From positions 124,001 through 188,000 of the IMG/VR virus record IMGVR_UViG_3300042541_001760: 64,000 nucleotides of DNA; one strand, 5' to 3'. The position numbers and the translations under genes are program-made. Shown here in pieces: positions 6,014 to 61,801 of this stretch (within the stretch, counting starts at the first letter, position 1; each line of letters opens with the position of its first letter). The notes under the pieces are model-generated. The model was not told where the DNA came from. It saw only the letters and a program-made list of their open reading frames with translations, and did no database searches.

Positions 6014-6541
6014 TTATAGGTAATCTACACTAATATTAAAACTTAAACCATTGTAGGGTTTATGTATCTTAGAATATATTGCCGATACTATATCACCTAT
6101 TTCATCACTTATTTCCCATAAGATATCTTCATACTCTTTATCACCCAAATTATTAAAATCAATACGATGTCCAGAATCAATTAAAGTCAGTTCTCCATCC
6201 ATTATTTGAGCCAAGACAGTTATATCTTCACCCCAATCACTACCATCTAATATTTCCATCATAAACCTAAATGAATACGACCCCATATTAACCACATCCG
6301 CATAGTCGTCTGTATTGAAAACTTTATTTTTAGTAATTCTGGTAAGATTACTTATTACATTATCCATACCACCAAAATACTCAATAAAAATCATTCTAAT
6401 AACCGCTTCATCAAATCCTGTAAGGATGGCTTTAACCACGGGATCATCAACTCTAGGTTTTTTACCTTGTAGTTTTATCTTATCGTAATAATTAAAAACT
6501 ACTTTTTTTAAAGGTTCGTATTCTTCCATACTAAAAATCAT
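6014..6541 (-). CDS. Hypothetical protein
   Basis: ORF 175 aa. Confidence 0.6.
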   Translation of the reverse strand: MIFSMEEYEPLKKVVFNYYDKIKLQGKKPRVDDPVVKAILTGFDEAVIRMIFIEYFGGMDNVISNLTRITKNKVFNTDDYADVVNMGSYSFRFMMEILDGSDWGEDITVLAQIMDGELTLIDSGHRIDFNNLGDKEYEDILWEISDEIGDIVSAIYSKIHKPYNGLSFNISVDYL

Positions 6542-7989
6542 ACCCCCCTAAGTATGTAAATTTTTTTCTAAGTTTCATCCCTGATATTTTAGAGAAATAT
6601 TTAGTTACGATCTTATTAATTTCGTCTTCATCAGTCGCTCTAAAAATACTTGATACTCTTTCTAATAATTGTAAAGATATAGACCATTTGTGTCCGGATT
6701 CACCATCCCCAATCTTTAAGTCAACAACAAATACTAATCTTTCCTTATCATCAAAATAAGCGACTCTTGTATTAAGTTGGTTTTTCTCCCCTTCTAATAC
6801 ACCTAAAATATTGTCAATGTATTTAGTTACTAAACTATATAATCTTTCTTCACTTATTACTATATTCATATGAATAAATAGTGTGAATATAATAAAAATT
6901 AACGCATCATTTCGTTAATAATATTCATAAGATAGGTTTGTTTTTCTGATAAAACTCTAATCCGTTTTAATTGGGTTTCATTTAAATCAAATGATTCTGA
7001 TTTAACTTGGGAAATTTGATTTCCTAAGTGGTGATATTCCGACATCAATTGGTCGTATTTTTTTGCTTTGTTCTCGTTGTCCATATTATGAAATATATGT
7101 GGTATGGTGTGTTAGTCAATAGATGTTAAACTGCAAAAAACGTAACATCAACATCATAACTTTTTTCAAACCATACAACTAAATCATTTTTATTAATAAA
7201 AGGAAATGCGGATTTTAACATTTGGTAAAAATCATTATGAATATGTAACTTTTCATCCTTAAAATCGTAATATAATACCAAGTCCTTATTAAGTGTTACC
7301 CAAATACTGGTTTCCTGATGGTCATGACCAAACTTTAAATTATTCATATAGTCATAGAAGATTTCCATCAACCGACCATTCTGAGATTCAGAAATTAGTA
7401 TCTTCATAATCGGCAATATTATCCGAATCTTCAGCCCATTGTGTAAAATAGTCCAATTCCATATTATAGGACATACCTATTGAATCCTTAACATATTGTT
7501 CAAACATATCTTCAATTCTATCTTCACTAACACCCAACTCCATTGCTTTTTCAATAATACTTTCAGGAACTTCCAGTGTAATATATTTTAATTCACCTTC
7601 TAATGGTTGTTCGCTAATAACTCTTTTAACTAAACGAGTTAAATCTTTTTCTGTTAATTTTATAATTTTTTTCATACGCTTGCTTTAGATATTTTAACAC
7701 CTACGGTCCTATATTCAGGAAAATTATCCTTAAACCAATTATAAATATCGTCTTGATCAATAAACACAAATATGGATGTTATTCTTTCATAGAATTTCAA
7801 CGATATGTAAAGATAATATTCACCTTCATAATCTTGTTTTAGTAAAAAAACAAAATCTTTACCGGACTCAAATGCTGGTATGCCGAGACCCAACCAATTA
7901 TCATTCACTTTTAAATTAAGTTTGGACATATAATCCTCAAAGTGTTTATATAACCTGTCTTTACGTTCTTGTGATATTATTATTTTCAT
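6531..7989 (-). CDS. Cluster of short leader-bearing hypothetical genes (6531-6869, 6899-7084, 7126-7407, 7388-7675, 7672-7989)
   Basis: Contiguous ORFs starting MNIVISEE, MKILISES, MKKIIKLTEKDL, MKIIISQE; 6899-7084 lacks a leader. Confidence 0.65.
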
Positions 7990-13415: not shown

Positions 13416-13478
13416 AATTTATAAATACTCAGTAAAACAAAAAACCCCACCTTTGTGGGATGGGGTTTAAAATATATA

Positions 13479-14649: not shown

Positions 14650-15018
14650 TTAAACGTAACTACTATCGTTTGACTTTGATTTATTTTGTGTAAACTCCTC
14701 ACAAAAAGATTGAAAGTATTTATCACCTTCAGGGGTAAATTTGTATCTATAAAAATCTCTAAAATCGTCTTTTACTTTATGTCCTGGACAACTGTACCAA
14801 AATTCATGAACTTCTTCCCCTCCACTAGCTTTAAAGTATATATCAATACCTTTAGGTTCGGTACTATATACCGTAATGTTACTGAACAAGGCTCCTGTCA
14901 CATCATTTAACAATTTTAATTTTTTTCCAGATCCACCTTCATTATTGGATTGTTCACTTAGAACTCTTTTTACTAATCTAACTAGATCGTTTTCTGTTAA
15001 TCTTACAATTTTTCTCAT
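14650..15018 (-). CDS. Leader-bearing hypothetical protein
   Basis: MRKIVRLTENDLVRLVKRVLSEQ. Confidence 0.65.
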   Translation of the reverse strand: MRKIVRLTENDLVRLVKRVLSEQSNNEGGSGKKLKLLNDVTGALFSNITVYSTEPKGIDIYFKASGGEEVHEFWYSCPGHKVKDDFRDFYRYKFTPEGDKYFQSFCEEFTQNKSKSNDSSYV

Positions 15019-15058
15019 AATATATTTTTAATTATAAATACTCAGATTTTCTAAAAAA

Positions 15059-16330
15059 TTATGCAGTTGGGTTGGTGGGTGATGTATTATTTTGTTTTAG
15101 TGCCAATTGATTAATATTTTGCCACATTTGATTTACATCAGTAAAACCTCTTTGGGCCCAACATAAAAATAACCAATAGATATCTACACTAGATTTCTCT
15201 CTAGTAATATATGGTTTTATCATATCTAAAGTTATGTTCTGACCTGGTTTTATCCCTAGAAGCCGTCTAATACCGGTAATATTTGACATTTTTTCAGTTT
15301 CTCTACAAATATATCCAGGGTCATGGGCGTAGTCCTTAATGATTTCATTTTTTCTTGCATCTATAATTGATATATATTTTGGATCCACATTTAATTTTTT
15401 CGCCGCCGCGGTAATTTCTGGTGAATACGTTGTGGTTTTATTGGAAGGGTTATAAAGGAAACTACTTTTGATTTGTTCTTTTGATTTTTTTTCGGAATCA
15501 TTTTTACCAAAAACAGAAGATATTTTCTCTTCAGGATTAAGTGGTTTTATGTCATAAATCATATGTTGAATTTCATGTATCAATATTTCATCAATTTCTT
15601 CTTCGTACGAAGACGAAAAAGAACAATTTACATATATGTTCCCATCAGGTCCATTAACAAATGCTATAGCATCATCGTGATCCGGATGAATACCATTAAT
15701 TTTTATTGTTCTATCATTATAAAAATTTAATTTTATTTTATTAAGTAATTCAAAGTATTTTGGATAGTATAAGGTGACCGCATACGGTTTATCGATATAA
15801 TTTGACAAAAACTTCTTTTTAGTTATTGGATCTGAGAGCCAATCTCTCCACCATTTTATAGCTCCAGGTAATGACTTACTCCAAAGTGATTTACATGATG
15901 CCATATCTGTAGTTGTAACGGAGTATCCATCACCCCCTGATAGTCGGAAACCCTCCATAAAGGTAGTCATACCACCATTATTTTTCCCAAAATTTGCCGT
16001 AGTGAAAACATTTATGTTATGAAGCGTAGCGATTAGAGACTCAACATCTTCCGCATTATCCCTTTCATATTCTTCGTTAATCATCTCAAAAAAATCGGAA
16101 TATCCCGTTTTTTTGTCTTTAAATAATGTTAATAAATATTTGAACTCATTTTGGTTCTTCAATTTTTTTATGGCTGAGAGTACTCCATCCGGATCGGTTC
16201 CCCAACCCTCAACCGCATCAATTATTTCGTTATAAATGGTAATTACAGAACTATTTGATTGGTCTTCCATAATAACCCTTTTAACAATACGAGTTAAATC
16301 AGATTCCGTTAATTTTATAACTTTTTTCAT
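15059..16330 (-). CDS. Putative metallopeptidase with annexin-like repeat and N-terminal leader
   Basis: MKKVIKLTESDL leader; AVEGWGTDPDGVLSAI; ILIHEIQH zincin motif with downstream E. Confidence 0.55.
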   Translation of the reverse strand: MKKVIKLTESDLTRIVKRVIMEDQSNSSVITIYNEIIDAVEGWGTDPDGVLSAIKKLKNQNEFKYLLTLFKDKKTGYSDFFEMINEEYERDNAEDVESLIATLHNINVFTTANFGKNNGGMTTFMEGFRLSGGDGYSVTTTDMASCKSLWSKSLPGAIKWWRDWLSDPITKKKFLSNYIDKPYAVTLYYPKYFELLNKIKLNFYNDRTIKINGIHPDHDDAIAFVNGPDGNIYVNCSFSSSYEEEIDEILIHEIQHMIYDIKPLNPEEKISSVFGKNDSEKKSKEQIKSSFLYNPSNKTTTYSPEITAAAKKLNVDPKYISIIDARKNEIIKDYAHDPGYICRETEKMSNITGIRRLLGIKPGQNITLDMIKPYITREKSSVDIYWLFLCWAQRGFTDVNQMWQNINQLALKQNNTSPTNPTA

Positions 16331-16361
16331 AATATAATTTTAATTATAAATACTAAGGGGG

Positions 16362-17981
16362 TTAAAAATATTGATTCATAAAAAATTCTTTCGCTAATTC
16401 TCTTGCCTTACGTTCAAAATACTTGTTCACTTCGGGGTTATTACCAAGATAACTAAATATTCCACCTTCAAGTTCAATTAGACTATTTCCCGATTCATAA
16501 GAAACATCTTTCTTATTAAGATTAAAAGTATAACAATGATATTGTTCATAATTCTTTCTACCTTTATAATGAGCGGTTATCAATACACAAATACTTTGAC
16601 CGTCTTTTGTGTAGTATATATTACTTGCTCTTTTAATTTCTAATCGTATACCCAACCGATCAATAAATTTTTCAATAGCTCTATCCATATAAATAAATAC
16701 TCAGGATTACTTATTAAGTTCTTCATCCAATATCCTTCTTGATTCATTCACCACCCACATATCCAATTCATTATGTGAATGAAAAAATCTTAACAAAGGC
16801 ATTTCATCTTCAGTTATAAACCATATATCGCTAAGTTTAATTTGGTCGTCTGAATAAACGTTAAAATCCGCCAATGAGGACGTTTCTTCAGGAGTTAGGT
16901 AATATATTGTCTTAGGTTCAAATGATATTAAAATACTATAAACTGTTTTATCCCACTTTTCAACTACCATTATGGAGTGTGAGATATTATAATGTTTGAA
17001 AATTAAGGTTAATAAAGATCCCATATAATTAAATATAATAAAACGGTTATCCCCACTTAACAATCTCCCAACGAATCTCAGGTCGGCTCTTTGTGCCCTT
17101 CTTAACTTGTTTAAGGTCAACTAACGCCTCGGCCCTTGTCTCATATGATTTTGGTGGAGTGTCCATCTCGTCATCCATCCTTCTTCTAAATTCAGAAGAT
17201 GTGGGTATCATACTATAACCATCATCACCTGTATATATAAACATACCATTTCCATTAAGATGTCTAGGGTGAGCAACAATATAATATCGTTCTTCCATTT
17301 CATTAATAACCCTTTCAACAATCCTTGTTAAATCGGATTCCGTTAATCTTATAACTTTTTTCATAATATATAAATACCCAAAATCATACTTTTTTATTTA
17401 ATAAACACAACACCAACATACTTCATGTTAATACCAAGATATTCAAACATTTTTTTAAATTCGGACCTGATTACAGAGATGTGAACACCATCAGAGGTTA
17501 TATTTTTTTCTTCCTTTACTTCAGGTCTATAATATAATGACTCCGGCATTGGTGGTTTAGAGTAAACCTCAATTACGTAATCATAAATTTGATTATTTCT
17601 ATCATACCTAATTTTTACCTCAAATTCAAATGGTTCGGTAATGAAGTTTTTGGTAAGATATCTATTGCCCAACTTATTATAAAGTTTTTCTACCGTTGCG
17701 GATAATTCATTCAGATTCATAACAGATAAATATATTGTAAAATAAAAAACCCCATACAAAGATGGGGAATTTAATTAACCATTCATTTCGGTTAAGAACT
17801 CACTAACGATTTGGTGACACTCATCATCGGTTAAATCTTGATCATAAAAATCAATCTCATCAGGGGTTACGTTCCATTCATCCCAATTGGCCATAATTGT
17901 AAACTCCTTACCTTGTTCGGTCTCACCTTTAAACCAAACCGTCTTTGATTGTAGTTTTCCGTTTTCGTAATCTATATTCAT
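16362..17981 (-). CDS. Run of short hypothetical genes (16362-16688, ~16707-17030, 17047-17364, 17394-17759, 17775-17981)
   Basis: ORF track; 17047-17364 carries the MKKVIRLTESDL leader. Confidence 0.55.
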
Positions 17982-17992
17982 AATTATTATTT

Positions 17993-18388
17993 TTAATAAT
18001 TACCACTAACTGTGGCAATTGTATATGCCCCATATCCTGTATTTGTGGCAACAACAACATTGTTTCTATAAATTTTAACTGTCACATCACCCGAAGAATT
18101 ATTATTCTGAGCGGATACGTACAACCATCTAGTTTGGTTTTCTAGTGGAGTTCCATCCCCATCAACAGTTAATTTTTGAGTCCACGAATAAACCCATCCA
18201 TTACCAACACTAGACCATTGTTGTGTATTATCACTAGTGTTTTGTATTGTCATAGAATAATCACCGCCAGATCCACTAACTTCATACTTATAATTATAGG
18301 TTACTTCTTTTGTTAAATCCTCTTTTGAACAAGAACTTAATACTAAGCACATCATTAGTGCCATCATCGTCATCTTAATTGTTTTCAT
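17993..18388 (-). CDS. Putative lipoprotein
   Basis: Signal peptide with lipobox LSSC followed by a beta-rich domain. Confidence 0.65.
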   Translation of the reverse strand: MKTIKMTMMALMMCLVLSSCSKEDLTKEVTYNYKYEVSGSGGDYSMTIQNTSDNTQQWSSVGNGWVYSWTQKLTVDGDGTPLENQTRWLYVSAQNNNSSGDVTVKIYRNNVVVATNTGYGAYTIATVSGNY

Positions 18389-18390
18389 AA

Positions 18391-18924
18391 TTATTTAATG
18401 AATTTAGATAGTTCAGATTTATTTGAATCAAATTCCTCCTGAGTAATTAAACCAAGTTCAAGTTTATCTTTACATTTCTTTAATTCGGATAAGGCCTCAT
18501 CACTTGTCATACCTAACCCTTTAACTTCACCTGTTTCAATTGCATTCTCTAATAGTATTCTATAACTACCTGACAAAGCGTAAGGACCTTTACAAACTAA
18601 TAAGGCCGAGAAACCGACTCTCCTACTCCCACTATATGTAATACTTTTAATCTCCACAATTTGTCCCATTGCGGTAGCACCAGCATTTGTCATAGGGGTT
18701 AAAACATTATCACCAATAAAGATAAAGGCAAAAGTTTTATTTGATGAGGTAACCCCTATTTTGATTTTATCACCCACTTTATATAGATAACCATCCTTAC
18801 TTTCATACTGTTCAAATTTCCATTGAGATGGTTTTTCTGATAAGTCACTATATTTAAGGGTTTCTTGTCCAAAAGACACAATAGTTGAGTACATCATTAG
18901 TACCATCATCATAAGTTGTTTCAT
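18391..18924 (-). CDS. Secreted protein with C-terminal SHOCT-like domain
   Basis: Signal peptide ending SFGQ; DEALSELKKCKDKLELGLITQEEFD; TAnnTTTG promoter upstream (~18990). Confidence 0.65.
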   Translation of the reverse strand: MKQLMMMVLMMYSTIVSFGQETLKYSDLSEKPSQWKFEQYESKDGYLYKVGDKIKIGVTSSNKTFAFIFIGDNVLTPMTNAGATAMGQIVEIKSITYSGSRRVGFSALLVCKGPYALSGSYRILLENAIETGEVKGLGMTSDEALSELKKCKDKLELGLITQEEFDSNKSELSKFIK

Positions 18925-19189
18925 AAAAATACATTAATATAATTTCCTACTCTAATCGGTTTTCGGATACCCCGTTCTTATAACACAACAAAGATATAAT
19001 AATAATCCCATAAAATCCAAAAATTTTTCAGAAATTTTATTTCGTATATTAGGTCTTAAATTAAAACGGGGGTCAATGTTATGGAACGAAGGTAATTGTC
19101 ACCCTCATTCAGAATACAAAGGCAAATATTACCCTTAATAAAAAACCCCTCTTTATGGGAGGGGATTAGTATTGATGTTATTAAAAACC

Positions 19190-19444
19190 TCAATTTGTAT
19201 CACTTTCATAAGAACTAAATATTCTATCACCGAAATATTTATTATACTCTTTTGGCCTGTAATGTCTTAAAAGATTTAAACCTTCTAAAACGGCCTCAAT
19301 ATTCAGATTATTTAAATCGTGTTTAAAGTCTTCGGCACCCCCAAAATACTCATTAATATTTGAGGAATCAAATTTATCTTCTTTAATGACCCTCTTTACC
19401 AATCTAACAAGATCGGACTCTGTTAATCTTATAACTTTTTTCAT
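19190..19444 (-). CDS. Leader-bearing small protein
   Basis: MKKVIRLTESDLVRLVKRVIKED. Confidence 0.6.
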   Translation of the reverse strand: MKKVIRLTESDLVRLVKRVIKEDKFDSSNINEYFGGAEDFKHDLNNLNIEAVLEGLNLLRHYRPKEYNKYFGDRIFSSYESDTN

Positions 19445-19567
19445 AATATATTTTTAATTATAAATACTCGGATTTTCTAAAAAATTTTCCAGAAAACTTT
19501 TTTTGACACCCTTATTTGTGAGAGGGGATTATCCCCCCTAAAACAGGTCAAAATGTCACTATACGGA

Positions 19568-19591
19568 GGGGGGATACGGGGAGGGGAGGGG
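19568..19591 (+). other. Putative G-quadruplex motif
   Basis: GGGGGG-ATAC-GGGG-A-GGGG-A-GGGG in an intergenic region of an AT-rich genome. Confidence 0.65.
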
Positions 19592-19942
19592 TATCACCCC
19601 ATACAGGGGGGTAGTACCACACCCATACCACCCCCTCATTACTGTTTTACCCCTCCCACCATAATATGATTCATCTAATGTGACCTATTAAAGTTCTGAC
19701 ATAACCTAATTAAGTTATCAACTGACGATGTGACATTGTTAATAACTATCGCTTGTATATGTGGGGGAAAAGAATTATCTTTGTAGTGTGATAATGATTA
19801 AGTTCAGTCAAGGGTTGGGGACGTTGATGTTCGCTGGAGCGTATACTCCGTTACGTACTAACGTAAGTAACGTCGGTAGATGTTACGCTCCAACCTGCTT
19901 TATTATATATAATAAATCCCCATCGTTTATTATGTACGGATG

Positions 19943-19974
19943 TTTGGCAGTGTCAGATATTAATTGTATCTTTG
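19943..19974 (+). promoter_or_regulatory. Bacteroidota-type promoter driving a tRNA-like RNA
   Basis: TTTG-N20-TATCTTTG ending 7 nt before the tRNA-like 5' end. Confidence 0.7.
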
Positions 19975-19981
19975 TGGTGTT

Positions 19982-20050
19982 AGTTAGGTGGTGTAATTGG
20001 TAACACGGGAACTTATAGGCCAATCACAGGTTCGAGTCCTGTTCTGACTA
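19982..20050 (+). ncRNA. tRNA-like RNA with shortened, non-pairing anticodon region
   Basis: Acceptor AGTTAGG/TCTGACT plus A; D arm GTGT-AATTGGTA-ACAC; T arm ACAGG-TTCGAGT-CCTGT; only 19 nt between D and T arms, no anticodon stem; no encoded CCA. Confidence 0.7.
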
Positions 20051-20146
20051 CATCTGTATAACAGATTGGTGGAGCGACCTTTACGGTCCCAACTATTTGT
20101 GGGGGTTAAATTCCCCCACATTTAGTTTGTATATGTCAATATCTTT

Positions 20147-20563
20147 TTGTATATTAGCAATATGAAAGACGGACACATACTTCAGAGAGACATACACGTT
20201 AAGGCAATGAATAAACTTCTCCCCAAGTTTACCGTTGAACATAGCAGGATGTATAATATGGGTGAGACCGTTGTATCCTGTAAGATTAAGGTTAAGAGGG
20301 TTCGTAAGTATCACTATAACTATCTTCTTAATCCCCCTGATAAGATAAAGGCCATATACGAACTTGATGTTATTATTAGTGATGTTGTATTTAATGATGT
20401 CACAGGTCGTACTCGTGACCCCAAGTTATTCATTATTAATAACAAGAGATCCTTTAATAGGGGGTTGAAATGGTTTGGTGTGGAAAAGATTGAGAAGTAT
20501 ATTAATATGATTGACTCTGACCCTATGTCAATTAGAATATCAAAAATTGAATATAACCTCTAA
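20147..20563 (+). CDS. Hypothetical protein
   Basis: ORF, probable start at Met 20162. Confidence 0.5.
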   Translation: MYISNMKDGHILQRDIHVKAMNKLLPKFTVEHSRMYNMGETVVSCKIKVKRVRKYHYNYLLNPPDKIKAIYELDVIISDVVFNDVTGRTRDPKLFIINNKRSFNRGLKWFGVEKIEKYINMIDSDPMSIRISKIEYNL

Positions 20564-32414: not shown

Positions 32415-34486
32415 CTAATAAGTCAAACCTCCCATTACTGGTGTTACATTATCTAAGTTATAAGTTTCTTTCAACCACCCCTTCAAAATTAATCTCTCAT
32501 CATCCTGACTAAGATGGAAAATAGATTCAACTTTTGACCAAATATGTTTATAACTAATAAAAATAAATCCATTTTTTTCATTGTGTTCCATTACTAACTC
32601 ATGATCGGAATTCAAATAAAATACTTTATTAGAAAAATTATTATATTTGTTTGGTGTTAAATTACCGTAGTGTTGTTTTAACCACTTGATAGCCACCCTA
32701 TATAACTGATCCTTATTTACCTGTATGTCCATAATCTATAAATACCTTAATTAAGGACTATAAGGTCTAAAACCACCCAATTTGTAAGTCTCTTTCAACC
32801 ATTTATGAATAATTGATTCGCTATCTTCATAACTAAGATTAAAAATAGTTTTTATTTGTTCAAAAATTAAATCGTCAATATAAATATATTTACCATATTT
32901 AGCTTTAAGGTGGGACATCATAATCTCATCACTTGAATTTACATAAAACATTTCGTCAGGATGATCATCAAACTCCTTTTGTTTTAAATCACCATAGTAT
33001 ATGTTTAACCACTTTATAGCCACTCTCTCTAACTGATCCTTATTTACTTGTATGTCCATAATATATAAATACCTTAACTATCCCAATCCGTAATCTCATC
33101 AAACCCCCAATTATTCTTTAGTGGTGTTACATCATCATCCAATCCGTATGTTTCTTTTAACCAAACGTTAATAATTGATTGTACTTCCAAATATTTAAGA
33201 TGAAAAATGGAGTGAAGTTTTGACCATATACGGTCATTATCAATAAGAATATCTTTACGATGTCTAAGAATGTAATCGTATTCCATTATTATTTCATTTT
33301 TGTTATTAACAAAAAAGATAGTATATGGCACGTTTGTATGTTTTTTTGGTGTTAGATTACCATAGTGTTGATTTAACCACTTTATAACTACTCTCTCTAA
33401 CTGATGTCTATTTACCTGTATGTCCATAATATCTTATTCAAAACCAAAATTTAATGCTAAACGAGTCTGGCTTACCGTTATTCCCTCTAAGTTATATGTT
33501 TCTTTCAACCATACCTCTAATATTGATTGGATTTCATTATACTTAATATGGAAGATGTCTGTTATTTTTGACCAAAGGATATCACTATCAACCCAAACAG
33601 TGGGTTCATATTTATTATCCTTTTCATATTCTAATACGGTTACCCCTCGTTTATCTACGTAAAATACTTTACCAGGGATATTCAAATACGTTTTTGTTGT
33701 TAAGTCACCATAGTATATGTTTAACCACTTGATAACTACCCTAAACATTTGTTCTTTATTTACCTGTATGTCCATTATTTATTAGTTTTTTTTATTAAGG
33801 CTATCCGCAACCTTCCTCCAACGGAACTCGTAAAACCCTGAATCACTGGAAGGTCTAACATCTTTTAATCCGTAAGTATCTCTCAACCATACCTGCATAA
33901 TTGATTGAGTATCCATTTCATTAAGGTGAAAGATAGATTCTATCATTAACCAAATATCAGTATCAACCCAAACATCTTCATGTTCTGGAACCCACTCCAT
34001 TATAACTTTATTTTTGGGATCAACATAAAATAACGATTCAGAATAAGTATTATGTTCTACAGGTCTTAAATTACCAAAGTATTTATTTAACCACTTGATA
34101 ACTACCCTATATACTTGTTCTTCATTTACCTCTATATCCATAATTTATCCTAAATATTATATTGTATGACCTTGCCAACTTGTATCCTCTAACGGCATCA
34201 CACCCTCCAATTTGTATGTTTCTTCCAACCAAGCACTCATAATCGCTCTATTTTCACGAAGGCTAAGATGAAAAATGGATTCAACTTTTGACCAAATACC
34301 TTCTCTATCAATCCAAACACGATTGGTTTCTTGATTGTGCTCTATCATAATATAACTACCCGAATTTACATAAAATACTTTATTGGGGTAATCTTTATGC
34401 GTCTTTGGTGTTAAGTTTCCGTAGTGTTTGTTTAACCACTTGATAACTACCCTAAATACTTGTTCTCTATTTACCTGTATGTCCAT
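32415..34486 (-). repeat. Tandem array of six MDIQVN paralogs (32415-32732, 32751-33059, 33074-33427, 33434-33775, 33782-34141, 34157-34486)
   Basis: All start MDI[QE]VN..Q..RV.IKWL..xxGxL and contain IFxL...WLxxTYxL; the 5' nucleotide block ATGGAYATACARGTAAATA is conserved. Confidence 0.9.
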
Positions 34487-34541
34487 TATCCAATAAATAT
34501 ATAATAAAACAAAAAACCCCAATTAAAGTTGGGGTTTTATA

Positions 34542-49624: not shown

Positions 49625-49930
49625 TTATTGTCCAATTACCAAATCATCAAAATTTAATTTACCCATTCCTTTGTCACCCTCAACAAACTCATCATAAAAA
49701 TAGGCTTTAACAACGGAAGTAATACTTTGTTCGGCTTGAGCGATTTTACTTTCCATCCAATCGTCCATATCACCATTCTCTTCAAGGCTCTCCCACATTT
49801 TATAAGCCAATGTAGCGATGGTGAATAATTGTTGTTTCGCCATTTTATTTCCATCAGCATCTTCATTAATAGGTTTCAATTTATTAATGATTCTTTGTAG
49901 TTGATCCTCCGTTAATACGATATTTGCCAT
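49625..49930 (-). CDS. Leader-bearing hypothetical protein
   Basis: MANIVLTEDQL; KMAKQQL...DDWMESKIAQA. Confidence 0.6.
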   Translation of the reverse strand: MANIVLTEDQLQRIINKLKPINEDADGNKMAKQQLFTIATLAYKMWESLEENGDMDDWMESKIAQAEQSITSVVKAYFYDEFVEGDKGMGKLNFDDLVIGQ

Positions 49931-52929: not shown

Positions 52930-53624
52930 TTATCGTCCTTTGGGATAAACAAAATCACCTTCAAATTTTTTTACTCTTAGATTAAACAGATCCATTTTGT
53001 AAGTTTCTTTCAACCACACAGGAATAATTGATTTAACATCATCATTATGAAGGTGAAAAAAGTTTACTAAATGTGACCAAATATAATTATCACTAACAAA
53101 AACTTCCCAATAAGGTGTGGAAAATTGTAATAAAATTTGATTTTCGGAATCAATAAAAAATGTGTCGTTGGGATAATCCTCGTGTTTCCTTAGCGTTAAA
53201 TCACCATAGTGTTTATCTAACCACTTGATAACTACTCTTTCTAACTGATGTTTATTTACCTGTATGTCCATAATATATAAATACCTTAATCATTTTCCAA
53301 CCATGCGGTTGGAATGTCCTTGATACTTACAGGTCTTACTCCCTCTAAGTTGTAATCCTCCTCCATCCATACTCTCATAACTGATTGAGTGTCATCATAG
53401 TTAATGTGAAATAATGATTCAATTTTTGACCAAATTTCGTCATAATGAACATAAACATTATTATATTTTTTATCGTATTCCATCATAACATAATTGTTTG
53501 AATTTATGTAAAATACTGAGTTAGGGTCATTCTTATCTTTTTTTGGTATTAAGTTACCGTAGTATTTATTTAACCACTTGATAACTACTCTTTCTAATTG
53601 GTCTTTATTTACCTGTATGTTCAT
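52930..53624 (-). repeat. Two further MDIQVN paralogs (52930-53271, 53286-53624)
   Basis: Same N-terminal and C-terminal motifs as the 32.4-34.5 kb array. Confidence 0.9.
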
Positions 53625-54046
53625 TGTCTTACACTCAACACTTTTAATATTATCTCCTTCATTTCATTACCCAACGGACTAGGAAGATTATCCGCAGTAA
53701 AATAACCACAATCGGTATGTTCCTCACCATCTTTCGCATTATCCAAGTCAGGTGACACCTCCTCATTTACATCATATAGGAATAAACTCATTACCCCCTT
53801 TAATTTTGTGGTGTCTCTGTTATATCTCTTGATACCACCAATATAACTAAGGTCGCCCGGTGATACCTCAATCATCGTTTCTTCATATAACTCACGAACT
53901 GCGCAAGTTAATTTATCTTCATTGGGTTCTTGGTGACCACAAGGAACTGACCATTCGCCAGGTAAACTCTCATAGGCGTTTCTTTTACACAAAAGAACTT
54001 TGTCCTCAAAACGTATTAAAACACCGGAATACTGCTTATATTTCAT
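53621..54046 (-). CDS. NUDIX hydrolase
   Basis: CGHQEPNEDKLTCAVRELYEETMI nudix box. Confidence 0.85.
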   Translation of the reverse strand: MKYKQYSGVLIRFEDKVLLCKRNAYESLPGEWSVPCGHQEPNEDKLTCAVRELYEETMIEVSPGDLSYIGGIKRYNRDTTKLKGVMSLFLYDVNEEVSPDLDNAKDGEEHTDCGYFTADNLPSPLGNEMKEIILKVLSVRQ

Positions 54047-60448: not shown

Positions 60449-61801
60449 TTAATTATTTCTAATAATGATATATTGTTTTTCTAAAACATATTCAGAATCA
60501 TACGAACCATCATAACCATTCATAATTCCGTATCCATCAGAATCGACTAATCCTTGAGCCATAGCATCAACATCAACCCAATCTTTAACAGGCATCTCCC
60601 ACTCTTTTAACTTATCAAGAGGGTCATTCATTATATCACGCATTATTTCATCAACTTTTTCTTCAATCTGCGCTGGTGTTGGTTCTCTTACTCTATTTTG
60701 GATTTCCTCAATTTCTTCGTTCATTGCGTCAATCTGCTCTTCGTAATTATTCCATTCGTCAGAATTTATATCAGTTTCAGATTGTAGGTCTTCCATTTGA
60801 CTTATTTTATTTTCAAGTTCTTCAATATGTTCTTCTTCTTCATCGGTAGGTCCAAAATCGTTTTCATCAAAATATACATCTGTGTTGTTCATAACATCAT
60901 CCTCATAATGACTTCTAAAGAAGTATTCAATTCCACTCTCATCCAAATAATCTTCAACAAACCCCGTATTATAATTGTCAACACCAAGATCATCTATTGA
61001 GTCTTTTGCATATCGTAAAGCCTCGGCGTCCGCTTCTTCCTCACTACCCACACGATATTCTCTACCTGAAAGATCACCAGTGATAATATCAAAATTTAAC
61101 ATACTATTTCTATACCTACCCCCCGGTATTAATGAATATACATCCATTTTATTTTCTAAGGCTTCAATATCCTCCTCAATTGCGTCTATATTTCCTTGTA
61201 ATTCACCGGTATCGTTTCCTTGTTCTTGGTCATAAAGTAATCCACCTAACATTTCTTTAAGTTGTCTTAATTCAACTTCTTCTTCTTCCGTTATAAACAT
61301 ATCAGATTCTTCCGAAGATAGGTATTGAAATAAGGCTTGAGCTCTCAATCCATCGTAGTCCTCATTTTCAATTGCCCATTCATTTCTCTCCCTTCTTAGC
61401 TGAGCATCCGCCAACAATCCATTTATTCTAATACGTTCTCTCTTTCTCGCTATTGGTGTTCCTCCATCCCATATACTTCCCGTTACGGTAACTCCATCAA
61501 TAGATGATATTTCAGATCTGGATATATCCAACCTTCCATCAACATATTTTATTGGACCCATACTTTTAAACGAATCGTTATTTAAATTTAAACCCCCATT
61601 TATCTTAACCTTTTTACCTCTAAACATTTTTGTTTTAGCCAAAAAGTCCAAATTATTATTTGCTCTCTCAGCGTATTTTTTAAATTCATCTCCGGTCATC
61701 TCAATCCACTGCTCTTCATTTTGAACATCTTCTGTTTGTTCAATAACTAACTTAACTATATTCTCAAGGTCAGATTCCTTTAATTTAATAATTCTTGCCA
61801 T
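60449..61801 (-). CDS. Leader-bearing protein with LRR-like segment and acidic coiled coil
   Basis: MARIIKLKESDL leader; GGLNLNN...DGRLDISRS.ISSI. Confidence 0.55.
   Translation of the reverse strand: MARIIKLKESDLENIVKLVIEQTEDVQNEEQWIEMTGDEFKKYAERANNNLDFLAKTKMFRGKKVKINGGLNLNNDSFKSMGPIKYVDGRLDISRSEISSIDGVTVTGSIWDGGTPIARKRERIRINGLLADAQLRRERNEWAIENEDYDGLRAQALFQYLSSEESDMFITEEEEVELRQLKEMLGGLLYDQEQGNDTGELQGNIDAIEEDIEALENKMDVYSLIPGGRYRNSMLNFDIITGDLSGREYRVGSEEEADAEALRYAKDSIDDLGVDNYNTGFVEDYLDESGIEYFFRSHYEDDVMNNTDVYFDENDFGPTDEEEEHIEELENKISQMEDLQSETDINSDEWNNYEEQIDAMNEEIEEIQNRVREPTPAQIEEKVDEIMRDIMNDPLDKLKEWEMPVKDWVDVDAMAQGLVDSDGYGIMNGYDGSYDSEYVLEKQYIIIRNN

What the first reader, a model, noticed from the sequence alone, without database searches (positions are those of the whole stretch)
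15016..19486. Promoter + leader appears to be copied as a DNA cassette in front of new genes
Seen: 15016-15060 and 19442-19486 match at 44 of 45 nt. The match covers the start codon, 5' UTR, TATTTATA motif and upstream flank, and similarity continues into the leader codons. Related copies lie at ~16290-16355 and ~17330-17380, but the downstream coding regions are unrelated. Inference: recombination at this cassette recruits new cargo into the late/packaged programme, a gene-capture mechanism.
Basis: partly seen in the sequence, partly recalled or inferred. Interest (0 to 1): 0.7.

Follow-up and report, generated by a model that had tools for sequence, protein, structure and literature searches.

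The report
Capsid-targeting leader on swappable phage genes
A large uncultured lake phage related to T4 puts the same promoter and the same 22-residue N-terminal tag, most likely a "pack me into the capsid, then cut me off" signal, in front of many unrelated small genes, and in its relatives the gene bodies behind that tag have been exchanged by recombination.

Summary
Window 15016-15060 and 19442-19486 match at 44 of 45 nt, with none expected by chance. Related copies lie at about 16275-16378, 17309-17412 and 7620-7723.

All copies sit on the minus strand at gene starts. Each is a TATTTAT promoter-like box, a short AT-rich leader RNA and 22 codons for M-K-K-[VI]-[IV]-[RK]-L-T-E-x-D-L-x-R-[IL]-V-K-R-V-I-x-E. 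The proteins behind them are unrelated.

The tag is kept by selection on the protein. Third codon positions vary, and conservation stops exactly at I-x-Glu22, the cleavage motif of the T4 prohead protease. The 261-kb genome encodes that protease (Peptidase_S77) and a gp23-type capsid protein, as do all complete carrier genomes checked. The tag heads 8,113 protein clusters in public data and is unannotated.

Best reading: a T4-style capsid-targeting propeptide, inferred rather than shown.

The gene-capture idea is partly supported. Near-identical relatives carry different cargo behind the same promoter and tag, with the breakpoint at the tag's end. In this window, however, only the promoter is near-identical. 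The two tags have diverged to background level.

This is a new, much expanded variant of the T4 internal-protein and PeSL cassette theme.

The parts
19445..19486 (-). Promoter-like region and 5' UTR of the 84-aa gene. TATTTAT lies at 19460-19466, followed by a 15-nt AT-rich spacer to the ATG, with an upstream TTTTTAGAAAAT element.
   Evidence: It is 41/42 identical to 15019-15060. The same extended promoter class occurs in relatives L138, L031 and L132.
19190..19444 (-). 84-aa gene. Codons 1-22 (19379-19444) encode the leader MKKVIRLTESDLVRLVKRVIKE. The cargo is acidic and has no family match.
   Evidence: An ortholog with the same leader lies in L138:1201-1455.
19140..19166 (-). Intrinsic-terminator-like hairpin (CCCCTCC ... 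GGAGGGG followed by a T run on the minus strand) after the 84-aa gene. Homology with relative L138 ends here.
   Evidence: Sequence. The element is repeated at 13421-13468 and 17726-17768 and in relatives (families D6, D10, D11, D14).
17365..17380 (-). Short promoter version for the 105-aa gene. TATTTAT lies at 17370-17376, only 5 nt from the ATG.
17047..17364 (-). 105-aa gene. The leader occupies 17299-17364 (MKKVIRLTESDLTRIVERVINE). The cargo is orthologous to L031:2283-2603, where it sits behind the long promoter version typical of 19444/15018.
16331..16360 (-). Promoter-like region and UTR of the 423-aa gene. TATTTAT lies at 16346-16352.
   Evidence: 33/42 identical to the 15018 copy.
15059..16330 (-). 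423-aa gene. The leader occupies 16265-16330. The cargo is a putative zincin-type metallopeptidase: HExxH at residues 252-256 is invariant in 59 homologs, and the N-terminal region is annexin-like.
   Evidence: Distant homologs of the same cargo carry other, shorter N-terminal leaders that also end in [LI]-x-E.
15019..15060 (-). Promoter-like region and UTR of the 122-aa gene. TATTTAT lies at 15034-15040. The region ends at the stop codon of the upstream 423-aa gene.
14650..15018 (-). 122-aa gene. The leader occupies 14953-15018 (MRKIVRLTENDLVRLVKRVLSE). The cargo has no family match.
7388..7675 (-). 95-aa gene with the leader (7610-7675) but no TATTTAT box upstream. This shows that leader and promoter are separable.
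49625..49930 (-). 101-aa gene with a diverged leader (MANIVLTEDQLQRIINKLKPINE) behind a TATTTAT box.
60449..61801 (-). 450-aa gene with a diverged leader (MARIIKLKESDLENIVKLVIE).
   Evidence: 17 bits, E 5.5e-4 in the genome.
6531..6869 (-). 112-aa gene with the short leader type (MNIVISEERLYSLV...) that is common in relatives.

Best explanation
The repeated element is a three-part expression and sorting unit on the minus strand:
1. A phage-specific promoter-like box, (A/G)TATTTAT(A/T).
2. A short AT-rich untranslated spacer.
3. Twenty-two codons for a basic amphipathic N-terminal peptide, MKK-hh-(R/K)-LTE-x-DL-x-R-(I/L)-VKRVI-x-E.

The peptide is most likely a capsid-targeting propeptide of the kind known from the T4 internal proteins. 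It would carry whatever protein follows it into the assembling prohead core. The T4-type prohead protease (Peptidase_S77) would then cut it off after Glu22 (motif I-x-E), leaving the mature cargo inside the head to be ejected with the DNA.

Because dozens of genes share the same roughly 100 nt (terminator hairpin, promoter, leader), the unit also works as a portable patch of homology. Homologous recombination there, and at the next intergenic terminator/promoter, swaps or inserts cargo genes that are at once correctly expressed and tagged.

Shown: the anatomy, protein-level conservation with a sharp end at I-x-E, the unrelated cargo, restriction to T4-like jumbo genomes that encode the protease, and cargo replacement at the leader boundary in relatives.

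Inferred: packaging, cleavage, ejection, and late timing of expression.
For: Anatomy and copies.

Genome-wide there are 8 strong leaders plus 2 diverged and 2 short-type ones. Their cargo shows no mutual BLASTP similarity. In the clade, 140 leader proteins fall into 95 cargo clusters.

Selection on the peptide:
- In 124 distinct copies, third codon positions carry 0.3-1.1 bits.
- Codon 20 (I/L/V/M) and codon 22 (Glu, 99%) lay outside the search pattern yet are conserved.
- Information drops to about 0.1-0.3 bits from codon 23 on.
- In an independent set of 127 database proteins, position 20 is Ile in 121 and position 22 is Glu in 126.

The T4 protease gp21 cuts after L/I-x-E, and internal-protein propeptides of 10-19 residues target proteins to the core (PMC9026906). 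T4 IpII and IpIII begin MKTYQEFIAE, ending I-A-E.

Head genes:
- This genome encodes Peptidase_S77 (83 bits) and a gp23-family capsid protein (210 bits).
- The capsid protein has SFLINE|A where T4 gp23 has SFLTE65|A.
- The acidic scaffold protein has ...LVKESIVSEQ| near its N-terminus.
- All 6 carrier genomes that are at least 90% complete encode the protease. CheckV estimates suggest the shorter carrier contigs are fragments of jumbo genomes.

Cargo evidence:
- The HExxH cargo family occurs in other lineages with different short leaders, all ending [LI]-x-E(Q).
- A related genome has long or short leaders on at least 14 of 40 neighbouring genes.
- One tagged protein is a cell-wall hydrolase that matches the PHROG 'internal virion protein with endolysin domain'.

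Scale: 8,113 cluster representatives carry the tag at E<=0.001, almost always at residues 1-28.

Promoter:
- TATTTAT lies within 45 nt upstream of 26% of 341 crude gene calls, against 1% inside genes.
- Spacing to the ATG is 4-6 or 13-20 nt.
- The box precedes the protease gene and the scaffold gene; the capsid gene follows the scaffold gene directly and has no box of its own.
- 76% of 118 leader genes in relatives have it.

Recombination:
- Cargo replaced behind identical promoter and leader in L005/L107 and L069/L074.
- A 115-nt shared tract in L060.
- Chimeric relations with L031 and a variable gene set in L138.
- Promoter copies within a genome share lineage-specific bases.
- Lake metagenome contigs pile up 10-20 fold on the four leader segments and diverge at the leader boundary.
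Against: - There are no virion proteomics, N-terminal sequences or expression data for this uncultured phage, so packaging and cleavage are untested.
- The leader has no sequence similarity to the T4 signal and is twice as long.
- The cargo is as often acidic as basic, unlike the basic T4 internal proteins.
- A single-sequence search with T4 gp55 found no late sigma factor, so 'late promoter' is not established. A phage RpoD-like sigma factor exists.
- Recombination evidence in this window itself is weak. The two near-identical promoters sit in front of leaders that have diverged to background level.
- Over the whole sample, same-genome pairs are barely more alike than different-genome pairs (upstream 0.48 vs 0.40), whereas orthologs share 0.70. 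Most units therefore look old and vertically inherited.
Confidence: 0.6

Rival explanations
1. The leader is a conserved N-terminal protein module with some other role and is not removed. Possibilities include docking onto another virion part (portal, tail, baseplate), an oligomerisation or nucleic-acid-binding strand-plus-helix element (it resembles the first half of a ribbon-helix-helix), or a localisation or turnover signal in the infected cell.
For: The strong protein-level conservation fits any peptide signal. AlphaFold models residues 1-8 as extended and 9-40 as a helix, at modest confidence (pLDDT 64-72). Tagged proteins in relatives include a sigma-factor-like protein, which need not be a virion component.
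Against: Conservation ends exactly at hydrophobic-x-Glu, the specificity of the protease family that every complete carrier genome encodes. What follows is often low-complexity linker, and no second helix is conserved. The other leader types on the same cargo family also end in [LI]-x-E. The capsid protein's own predicted maturation site looks the same.
Confidence: 0.22
2. One reading: the similarity is mainly a recently copied DNA cassette (promoter plus leader) that spreads by recombination and captures genes, and the peptide itself has no function.
For: 44/45 identity upstream. About 115 nt are identical in L060. Cargo swaps occur at the leader boundary.
Against: Across 124 distinct copies the amino acids are fixed while synonymous positions vary. 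The two window leaders differ at 6 of 22 residues and match at third positions only at background level. One leader copy has no promoter (7675), and one promoter of the same class in L138 drives a gene with a different leader type. 8,113 diverged clusters keep the peptide.
Confidence: 0.05
3. Ordinary gene family: whole-gene duplications whose C-terminal parts diverged beyond recognition while the N-terminus stayed conserved.
For: Four copies lie within 5 kb. Small phage proteins evolve fast.
Against: The change from near-invariance to no similarity happens within one codon. Cargo lengths range from 72 to 423 aa in the sample and include different recognisable folds: HExxH peptidase, GDSL + PG-binding + SLT hydrolase, and sigma-70 region 2. 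Near-identical genomes differ only in the cargo, which is replacement, not divergence.
Confidence: 0.08

Closest known systems
T4 / T-even internal proteins (IpI, IpII, IpIII and more than 30 variants) with their capsid targeting sequence (CTS)
   Same: A short N-terminal leader is shared by otherwise unrelated small proteins. The leader ends in the prohead-protease motif L/I-x-E: T4 MKTYQEFIAE, here ...RVI-x-E. The genome encodes the gp21-family protease, a gp23-family capsid protein and an acidic scaffold. The tagged genes sit in variable loci flanked by repeated promoter and stem-loop elements (PMC2839356; PMC12373910).
   Different: The leader is 22 rather than 10 residues and shows no sequence similarity. 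Copies are spread over the genome (at least 10 here) instead of two small loci. The repertoire is far larger (8,113 clusters). Cargo is not predominantly basic and includes enzymes. Packaging and cleavage are proven in T4 and only inferred here.
PeSL cassettes (promoter-early stem-loops) that mediate modular shuffling in T4-type phages (Arbiol et al. 2010, PMC2839356; Comeau et al. 2014, PMC4122927)
   Same: Composite intergenic units of a G/C-run hairpin terminator plus a consensus promoter are repeated many times. Insertions and replacements between close relatives are bounded by them.
   Different: The promoter box is TATTTAT close to the ATG, not a sigma-70 -35/-10 pair. There is no Shine-Dalgarno sequence. 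Here the homology patch extends into the coding region, so that recombination also transfers a protein sorting signal. Mini-circles were not tested.
Propeptides of phiKZ-like / SPN3US giant phage head proteins cut by a gp21-related protease
   Same: Many head and ejection proteins are processed C-terminal to Glu after a three-residue motif (PMC9026906).
   Different: Those phages use S/A-x-E and have no shared targeting leader. The capsid lineage is different.
Integron gene cassettes and phage morons
   Same: Promoter-supplied, self-contained cassettes are added at preferred sites.
   Different: No integrase or attC-like site is involved. Exchange appears to rely on general homologous recombination at shared sequence.

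Membership tests
T4-type capsid targeting sequence / internal protein system | Leader at the extreme N-terminus of otherwise unrelated proteins | tested here: met
   (best match at residues 1-25/28 in nearly all listed hits).
T4-type capsid targeting sequence / internal protein system | Leader ends in the prohead protease motif (L/I-x-E, cut after Glu) | tested here: met
   Sequence level only. Ile20 occurs in 121/127 and Glu22 in 126/127 proteins, and conservation stops there. The motif is taken from PMC9026906.
T4-type capsid targeting sequence / internal protein system | Genome encodes a gp21-family prohead protease, a gp23-family capsid protein and a scaffold core | tested here: met
   PF03420 at 83 bits and PF07068 at 210 bits. 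An acidic scaffold gene lies upstream of the capsid gene. The protease is present in 6/6 complete carrier genomes.
T4-type capsid targeting sequence / internal protein system | Sequence homology of the leader to the T4 CTS (MKTYQEFIAE) | tested here: not met
   The T4 IpII and IpIII N-termini read share only the M-K start and the I-x-E end with the 22-residue leader. This is an analogue, not a homologue.
T4-type capsid targeting sequence / internal protein system | Tagged proteins are found in the head, processed, and ejected into the host | not testable with these tools
   The phage is an uncultured metagenomic one. Only DNA runs from lake water hold it.
PeSL-type modular shuffling cassettes | Repeated intergenic unit of stem-loop terminator plus consensus promoter | tested here: met
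   (families D6, D10, D11, D14, with CCCC/GGGG stems next to TATTTAT).
PeSL-type modular shuffling cassettes | Sigma-70-like early promoter (-35/-10) with a Shine-Dalgarno sequence | tested here: not met
   The box is TATTTAT, 4-6 or 13-20 nt from the ATG, and no conserved -35 or SD is present.
PeSL-type modular shuffling cassettes | Indels and replacements between close relatives bounded by the repeated units | tested here: met
   L005/L107, L069/L074 and L138 versus the window.
PeSL-type modular shuffling cassettes | Excised mini-circles formed by recombination between flanking units | tested here: inconclusive
   Metagenome contigs show 'goes back' joints between leaders (for example 16324 to 14992 in four runs). 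The shorter side is only 31 nt at 85% likeness, which is what other genes' leaders would also give.

The most novel reading that the evidence does not exclude
A whole clade of abundant freshwater T4-like jumbo phages, probably infecting Bacteroidota, uses one universal 22-residue 'address label' to load a very large and rapidly exchangeable arsenal of proteins into the capsid for co-injection with the DNA. The cargo includes peptidases, cell-wall hydrolases, possibly sigma factors and thousands of unknowns. The label together with its promoter doubles as the recombination site of an integron-like cassette system without an integrase. If so, the 8,113 tagged protein clusters would be the largest catalogue of candidate injected phage effectors (anti-defence or host-takeover proteins) recognisable from sequence alone.
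Probability: 0.4. Interest if true: 0.8.

Novelty: new variant of a known kind. Interest (0 to 1): 0.65.

Why it matters
Injected internal proteins are the first phage products to meet host defences. In T4 all three are specific inhibitors of GmrSD restriction enzymes (PMC12373910). Outside the T-even phages such proteins can hardly be recognised from sequence.

A sharply defined, unannotated 22-residue tag that marks more than 8,000 protein clusters in environmental phages would give three things:
- a simple sequence rule for finding candidate packaged effectors;
- a natural system for studying how cargo repertoires turn over by recombination at a coding and regulatory junction;
- a possible second targeting tag for loading foreign proteins into large capsids.

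It also explains a conspicuous repeat in these genomes that annotation pipelines ignore.

Tried and rejected
- Pfam and PHROGs scans of the four leader proteins in the finding and their neighbours gave nothing above cut-off.
- Megablast and tblastn against 50,697 GenBank phage records found no match for the locus, for the 84-aa protein or for the 24-residue leader. The nearest capsid proteins are only 40-43% identical.
- A literature search for the motif LTESDL found no paper.
- One complex prediction (prohead protease with leader residues 1-30, using own alignments) returned 'no answer' (score 0.00). It counts neither for nor against binding.
- A single-sequence search with T4 gp55 found nothing in the genome, which is uninformative.
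- Foldseek of the 423-aa model against the PDB gave only weak hits (E>0.3) to minimal zincins and annexin repeats. 'Metallopeptidase' therefore rests mainly on the invariant HExxH.
- The global MAFFT alignment of the capsid protein with T4 gp23 misplaced the N-terminus. The local alignment was used instead.
- Joints between leaders in metagenome contigs were considered as evidence of circles or rearrangements and rejected as ambiguous.
- Folding of the GC-rich island at 19505-19654 gave no signal.
- Repoila et al. 1994 (PMC395341) is not held. It is cited only through later papers.

Full report
**1. Observation**

The genes between 13 and 20 kb of the window all read on the minus strand. A search with the 45-nt string at 15016-15060 finds exactly one other site, 19442-19486, with one mismatch. 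None is expected in 100 dinucleotide-preserving shuffles.

The repeat finder groups five copies of a roughly 104-nt unit: 7620-7723, 14963-15066, 16275-16378, 17309-17412 and 19389-19492 (alignment).

Read on the minus strand, each unit ends the intergenic space and starts an ORF. It consists of upstream flank, (A/G)TATTTAT(A/T), an AT-rich spacer, the ATG, and then 22 codons. The five ORFs encode 95, 122, 423, 105 and 84 residues. Once the first 22 residues are removed they show no BLASTP similarity to one another.

**2. What genome this is**

The window is bases 124001-188000 of a 261,052-bp IMG/VR virus record with 32% G+C.

- It encodes a T4 gp21-family prohead protease (Peptidase_S77, 83 bits) and a gp23-family major capsid protein (210 bits).
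- A very acidic scaffold gene lies directly upstream of the capsid gene.
- The nearest capsid proteins in GenBank phages are 40-43% identical (uncultured huge phages, a Microcystis phage, Flavobacterium phage immuto). T4 is 25% identical.
- Nothing in GenBank phages matches the locus.
- The sequence is held by many lake-water metagenomes.
- The only hit in 185,579 species genomes is a 3.3-kb contig binned into a Bacteroidetes MAG. That is a weak hint to the host.

**3. The leader is a peptide signal, not just copied DNA**

Genome-wide, eight ORFs start with M-[KR]-K-[VI]-[IV]-[RK]-L-T-E-x-D-L-x-R-[IL]-V-K-R-[VI]-[IL]-x-E. A profile adds two diverged copies (window 61801 and 49930), and a looser pattern adds two of a shorter type.

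In 124 distinct copies:

- Replacement positions are fixed, while third positions of degenerate codons carry only 0.3-1.1 bits.
- Codons 20 and 22 were not part of the search pattern. Yet codon 20 always has T at its second position (a hydrophobic residue), and codon 22 is Glu in 99%.
- From codon 23 onward the information falls to 0.1-0.3 bits.

An exhaustive profile search of 1.84 billion cluster representatives finds 8,113 proteins at E<=0.001 (1,015 at E<=1e-10), nearly all matching at residues 1-28. Among the 127 best with a canonical start, position 20 is Ile in 121 and position 22 is Glu in 126. None carries a Pfam domain on the leader or a meaningful name, and no paper in the library contains the motif.

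**4. Why a capsid-targeting propeptide is the best reading**

The T4 prohead protease cuts after Glu in L/I-x-E. The T4 internal proteins carry N-terminal propeptides of 10-19 residues that target them to the prohead core and are then removed. Fusing the first 10 residues of IpIII to foreign proteins is enough to package them (PMC9026906; PMC3012670). T4 IpII and IpIII begin MKTYQEFIAE.

The leader here ends in I-x-E and also contains L-T-E. The hydrophobic residues L12, I15, V16, V19 and I20 fall on one face of a helix, and the peptide has a net charge of about +4 (direct reading). AlphaFold models residues 9-40 as a helix of lower confidence than the cargo body.

Other head proteins show the same kind of site:

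- This phage's capsid protein has SFLINE|A where a local alignment places T4's SFLTE65|A maturation site.
- The scaffold has ...LVKESIVSEQ| before its acidic tract.
- The protease has GILIE near its N-terminus.

The leader also tracks the protease:

- Every carrier genome that is at least 90% complete (6 of 6) encodes the protease.
- CheckV completeness suggests the shorter carrier contigs are fragments of jumbo genomes.

The cargo points the same way:

- The 423-aa cargo belongs to a family of more than 300 proteins with an invariant HExxH. Close members carry the 22-residue leader. Distant members carry other short leaders (MKIIITESQYKLIKEQ, MIRLKHILEQ, MKNLNEQIIKKAITKVLKE and others) that all end in [LI]-x-E.
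- In one related 321-kb genome, at least 14 of 40 consecutive genes start with a long or a short leader.
- A short-leader protein in this genome combines GDSL esterase, peptidoglycan-binding and SLT domains and matches the PHROG 'internal virion protein with endolysin domain'.

All of this is circumstantial. No experiment shows packaging or cleavage, and the one complex prediction gave no answer.

**5. The promoter part**

TATTTAT occurs within 45 nt upstream of 90 of 341 crude gene calls. The same 7-mer occurs in 4 equally long windows inside genes, and its reverse complement in 33 upstream windows. Spacing to the ATG is bimodal, 4-6 nt or 13-20 nt.

The box precedes the protease gene and the scaffold gene. 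The capsid gene follows the scaffold gene directly and has no box of its own. It is therefore a general phage promoter-like motif that morphogenetic genes also use, not something special to the leader genes.

Leader genes are nevertheless enriched for it. In relatives 90 of 118 have it, mostly with a 14-17 nt spacer. Promoter and leader are separable:

- The copies at window 7675 and genome 46932 lack the box.
- An L138 gene with the same extended promoter has a different leader type.

The longer similarity upstream of 15018 and 19444 (TTTTTAGAAAATC-N-GAG before TATTTAT) belongs to a promoter subclass that recurs in L138, L031, L132 and L014.

The phage encodes an RpoD-like sigma factor and a weak second candidate. 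T4 gp55 itself was not detected. 'Late' is thus an inference from the company the motif keeps.

**6. Does the unit capture genes?**

In the sample as a whole, promoter and leader evolve with their cargo:

| Pair type | Upstream identity | Third-position identity in the leader |
|---|---|---|
| Orthologs in different genomes | 0.70 | 0.83 |
| Unrelated cargo, same genome | 0.48 | 0.66 |
| Unrelated cargo, different genomes | 0.40 | 0.63 |

There are clear exceptions.

- *L060.* Two genes 401 nt apart share -47 to about +70 almost perfectly, from the 3' half of the upstream terminator to the codon after Glu22. Their cargo is unrelated.
- *L005 and L107.* These are 94-98% identical over kilobases on both sides. 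The similarity stops 59 nt into the leader gene and resumes about 1.1 kb later. The cargoes (207 and 156 aa) are unrelated.
- *L069 and L074.* These are 97% identical up to the I-K-E at the end of the leader, unrelated through the cargo (112 vs 98 aa), and identical again from just before the stop codon through the next terminator/promoter unit.

For the window's own locus:

- *L138.* It keeps the 84-aa gene and its upstream region (79-90% identity), but the homology ends at the terminator at 19137-19167. A different set of tagged genes follows.
- *L031.* The ortholog of the 105-aa cargo (window 17364) sits behind the long promoter version and directly after the conserved non-coding region. 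In the window that position is held by the 84-aa gene.
- *Promoter copies.* The 19444 promoter is closer to its paralog at 15018 (41/42) than to its ortholog in L138 (36/42). L138's own copies share their own variants. This suggests gene conversion, although only 3-5 sites are informative.
- *Metagenome contigs.* Contigs from four lakes pile up 10-20 fold on the four leader segments and run on into unlike sequence at the leader boundary.

Cargo exchange at this unit is therefore real in the clade. In the window itself the 44/45 match reflects a homogenised or strongly constrained promoter in front of two old, diverged leaders (6 of 22 residues differ; third-position identity 0.64).

**7. Comparison with what is known**

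The closest systems are two:

- The T-even internal-protein genes, which have a shared CTS, unrelated cargo and variable loci flanked by promoter/stem-loop repeats (Repoila et al. 1994, as described in PMC2839356 and PMC12373910).
- The PeSL cassettes of T4-type phages (PMC2839356, PMC4122927).

The present case works like both at once but is a member of neither by sequence. It differs as follows:

- The leader is unrelated to the T4 CTS and twice as long.
- The promoter is not sigma-70-like.
- The homology patch spans the regulatory region and the first 22 codons.
- Copies are dispersed over the genome.
- The repertoire is orders of magnitude larger.

I rate it a new variant of a known kind.

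**8. Verdict**

- Confidence that the leader is a selected N-terminal peptide signal: about 0.95.
- Confidence that it is a cleavable capsid-targeting propeptide: about 0.6.
- Confidence that the unit serves as a recombination junction for cargo exchange in this clade: about 0.7.

Noticed in passing
window 19982-20050 (+): Rfam tRNA model hit (41.5 bits, above gathering score) in a non-coding stretch on the strand opposite to the surrounding genes. ARAGORN reports no tRNA anywhere in the window. The surrounding 19735-20155 is conserved in relatives L031 and L138.
   Followed up: partly
window 19475-19700: G+C-rich island (47-49% in a 32% genome) full of G and C runs, just upstream of the 19444 promoter. 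It is conserved in L138 and L031. Its predicted folding is no better than that of shuffled sequence. Function unknown.
   Followed up: partly
window 18944-18976 (-): Match to the Rfam DUF805b RNA motif (39.3 bits, gathering score 35.6), directly upstream of the 177-aa signal-peptide protein gene 18391-18924.
   Followed up: no
window 17993-18388 and 18391-18924 (-): Two untagged genes between the leader genes encode secreted-type proteins. One has a lipoprotein-like signal (…LVLSSC…). The other has a signal peptide and a SHOCT-like C-terminus. Neither is present at the syntenic place in relative L138.
   Followed up: partly
L132:15394-16014 and L132:19365-20090: In a related 321-kb genome the leader heads a protein with a sigma-70 region 2 domain and a protein with a weak SLT lytic transglycosylase hit. 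A packaged sigma factor would be unusual.
   Followed up: no
proteins P0368, P0372, P0373, P0378, P0385, P0400: Some database proteins contain two leaders in one reading frame, the second still preceded by its Met. These look like two cassette genes fused in frame, or like natural polyproteins with an internal cleavable leader.
   Followed up: no
L031:1615-2181 (-): In this relative an HNH homing-endonuclease-like gene lies between the conserved non-coding region and the promoter-leader unit. It is absent from the window.
   Followed up: no
genome C1:76565-78019 (+), outside the window: 484-aa protein with the short leader type and GDSL esterase, peptidoglycan-binding and SLT domains. It is a candidate packaged cell-wall-degrading enzyme.
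   Followed up: partly
whole genome: TATTTAT boxes lie either 4-6 nt or 13-20 nt before the ATG, and no Shine-Dalgarno sequence is present. The close class predicts leaderless or nearly leaderless mRNAs.
   Followed up: partly
window 32446-34490 and 52985-53628: A separate family of 7-8 diverged tandem gene copies about 330-370 nt apart (repeat families D1-D4), unrelated to the leader unit.
   Followed up: no
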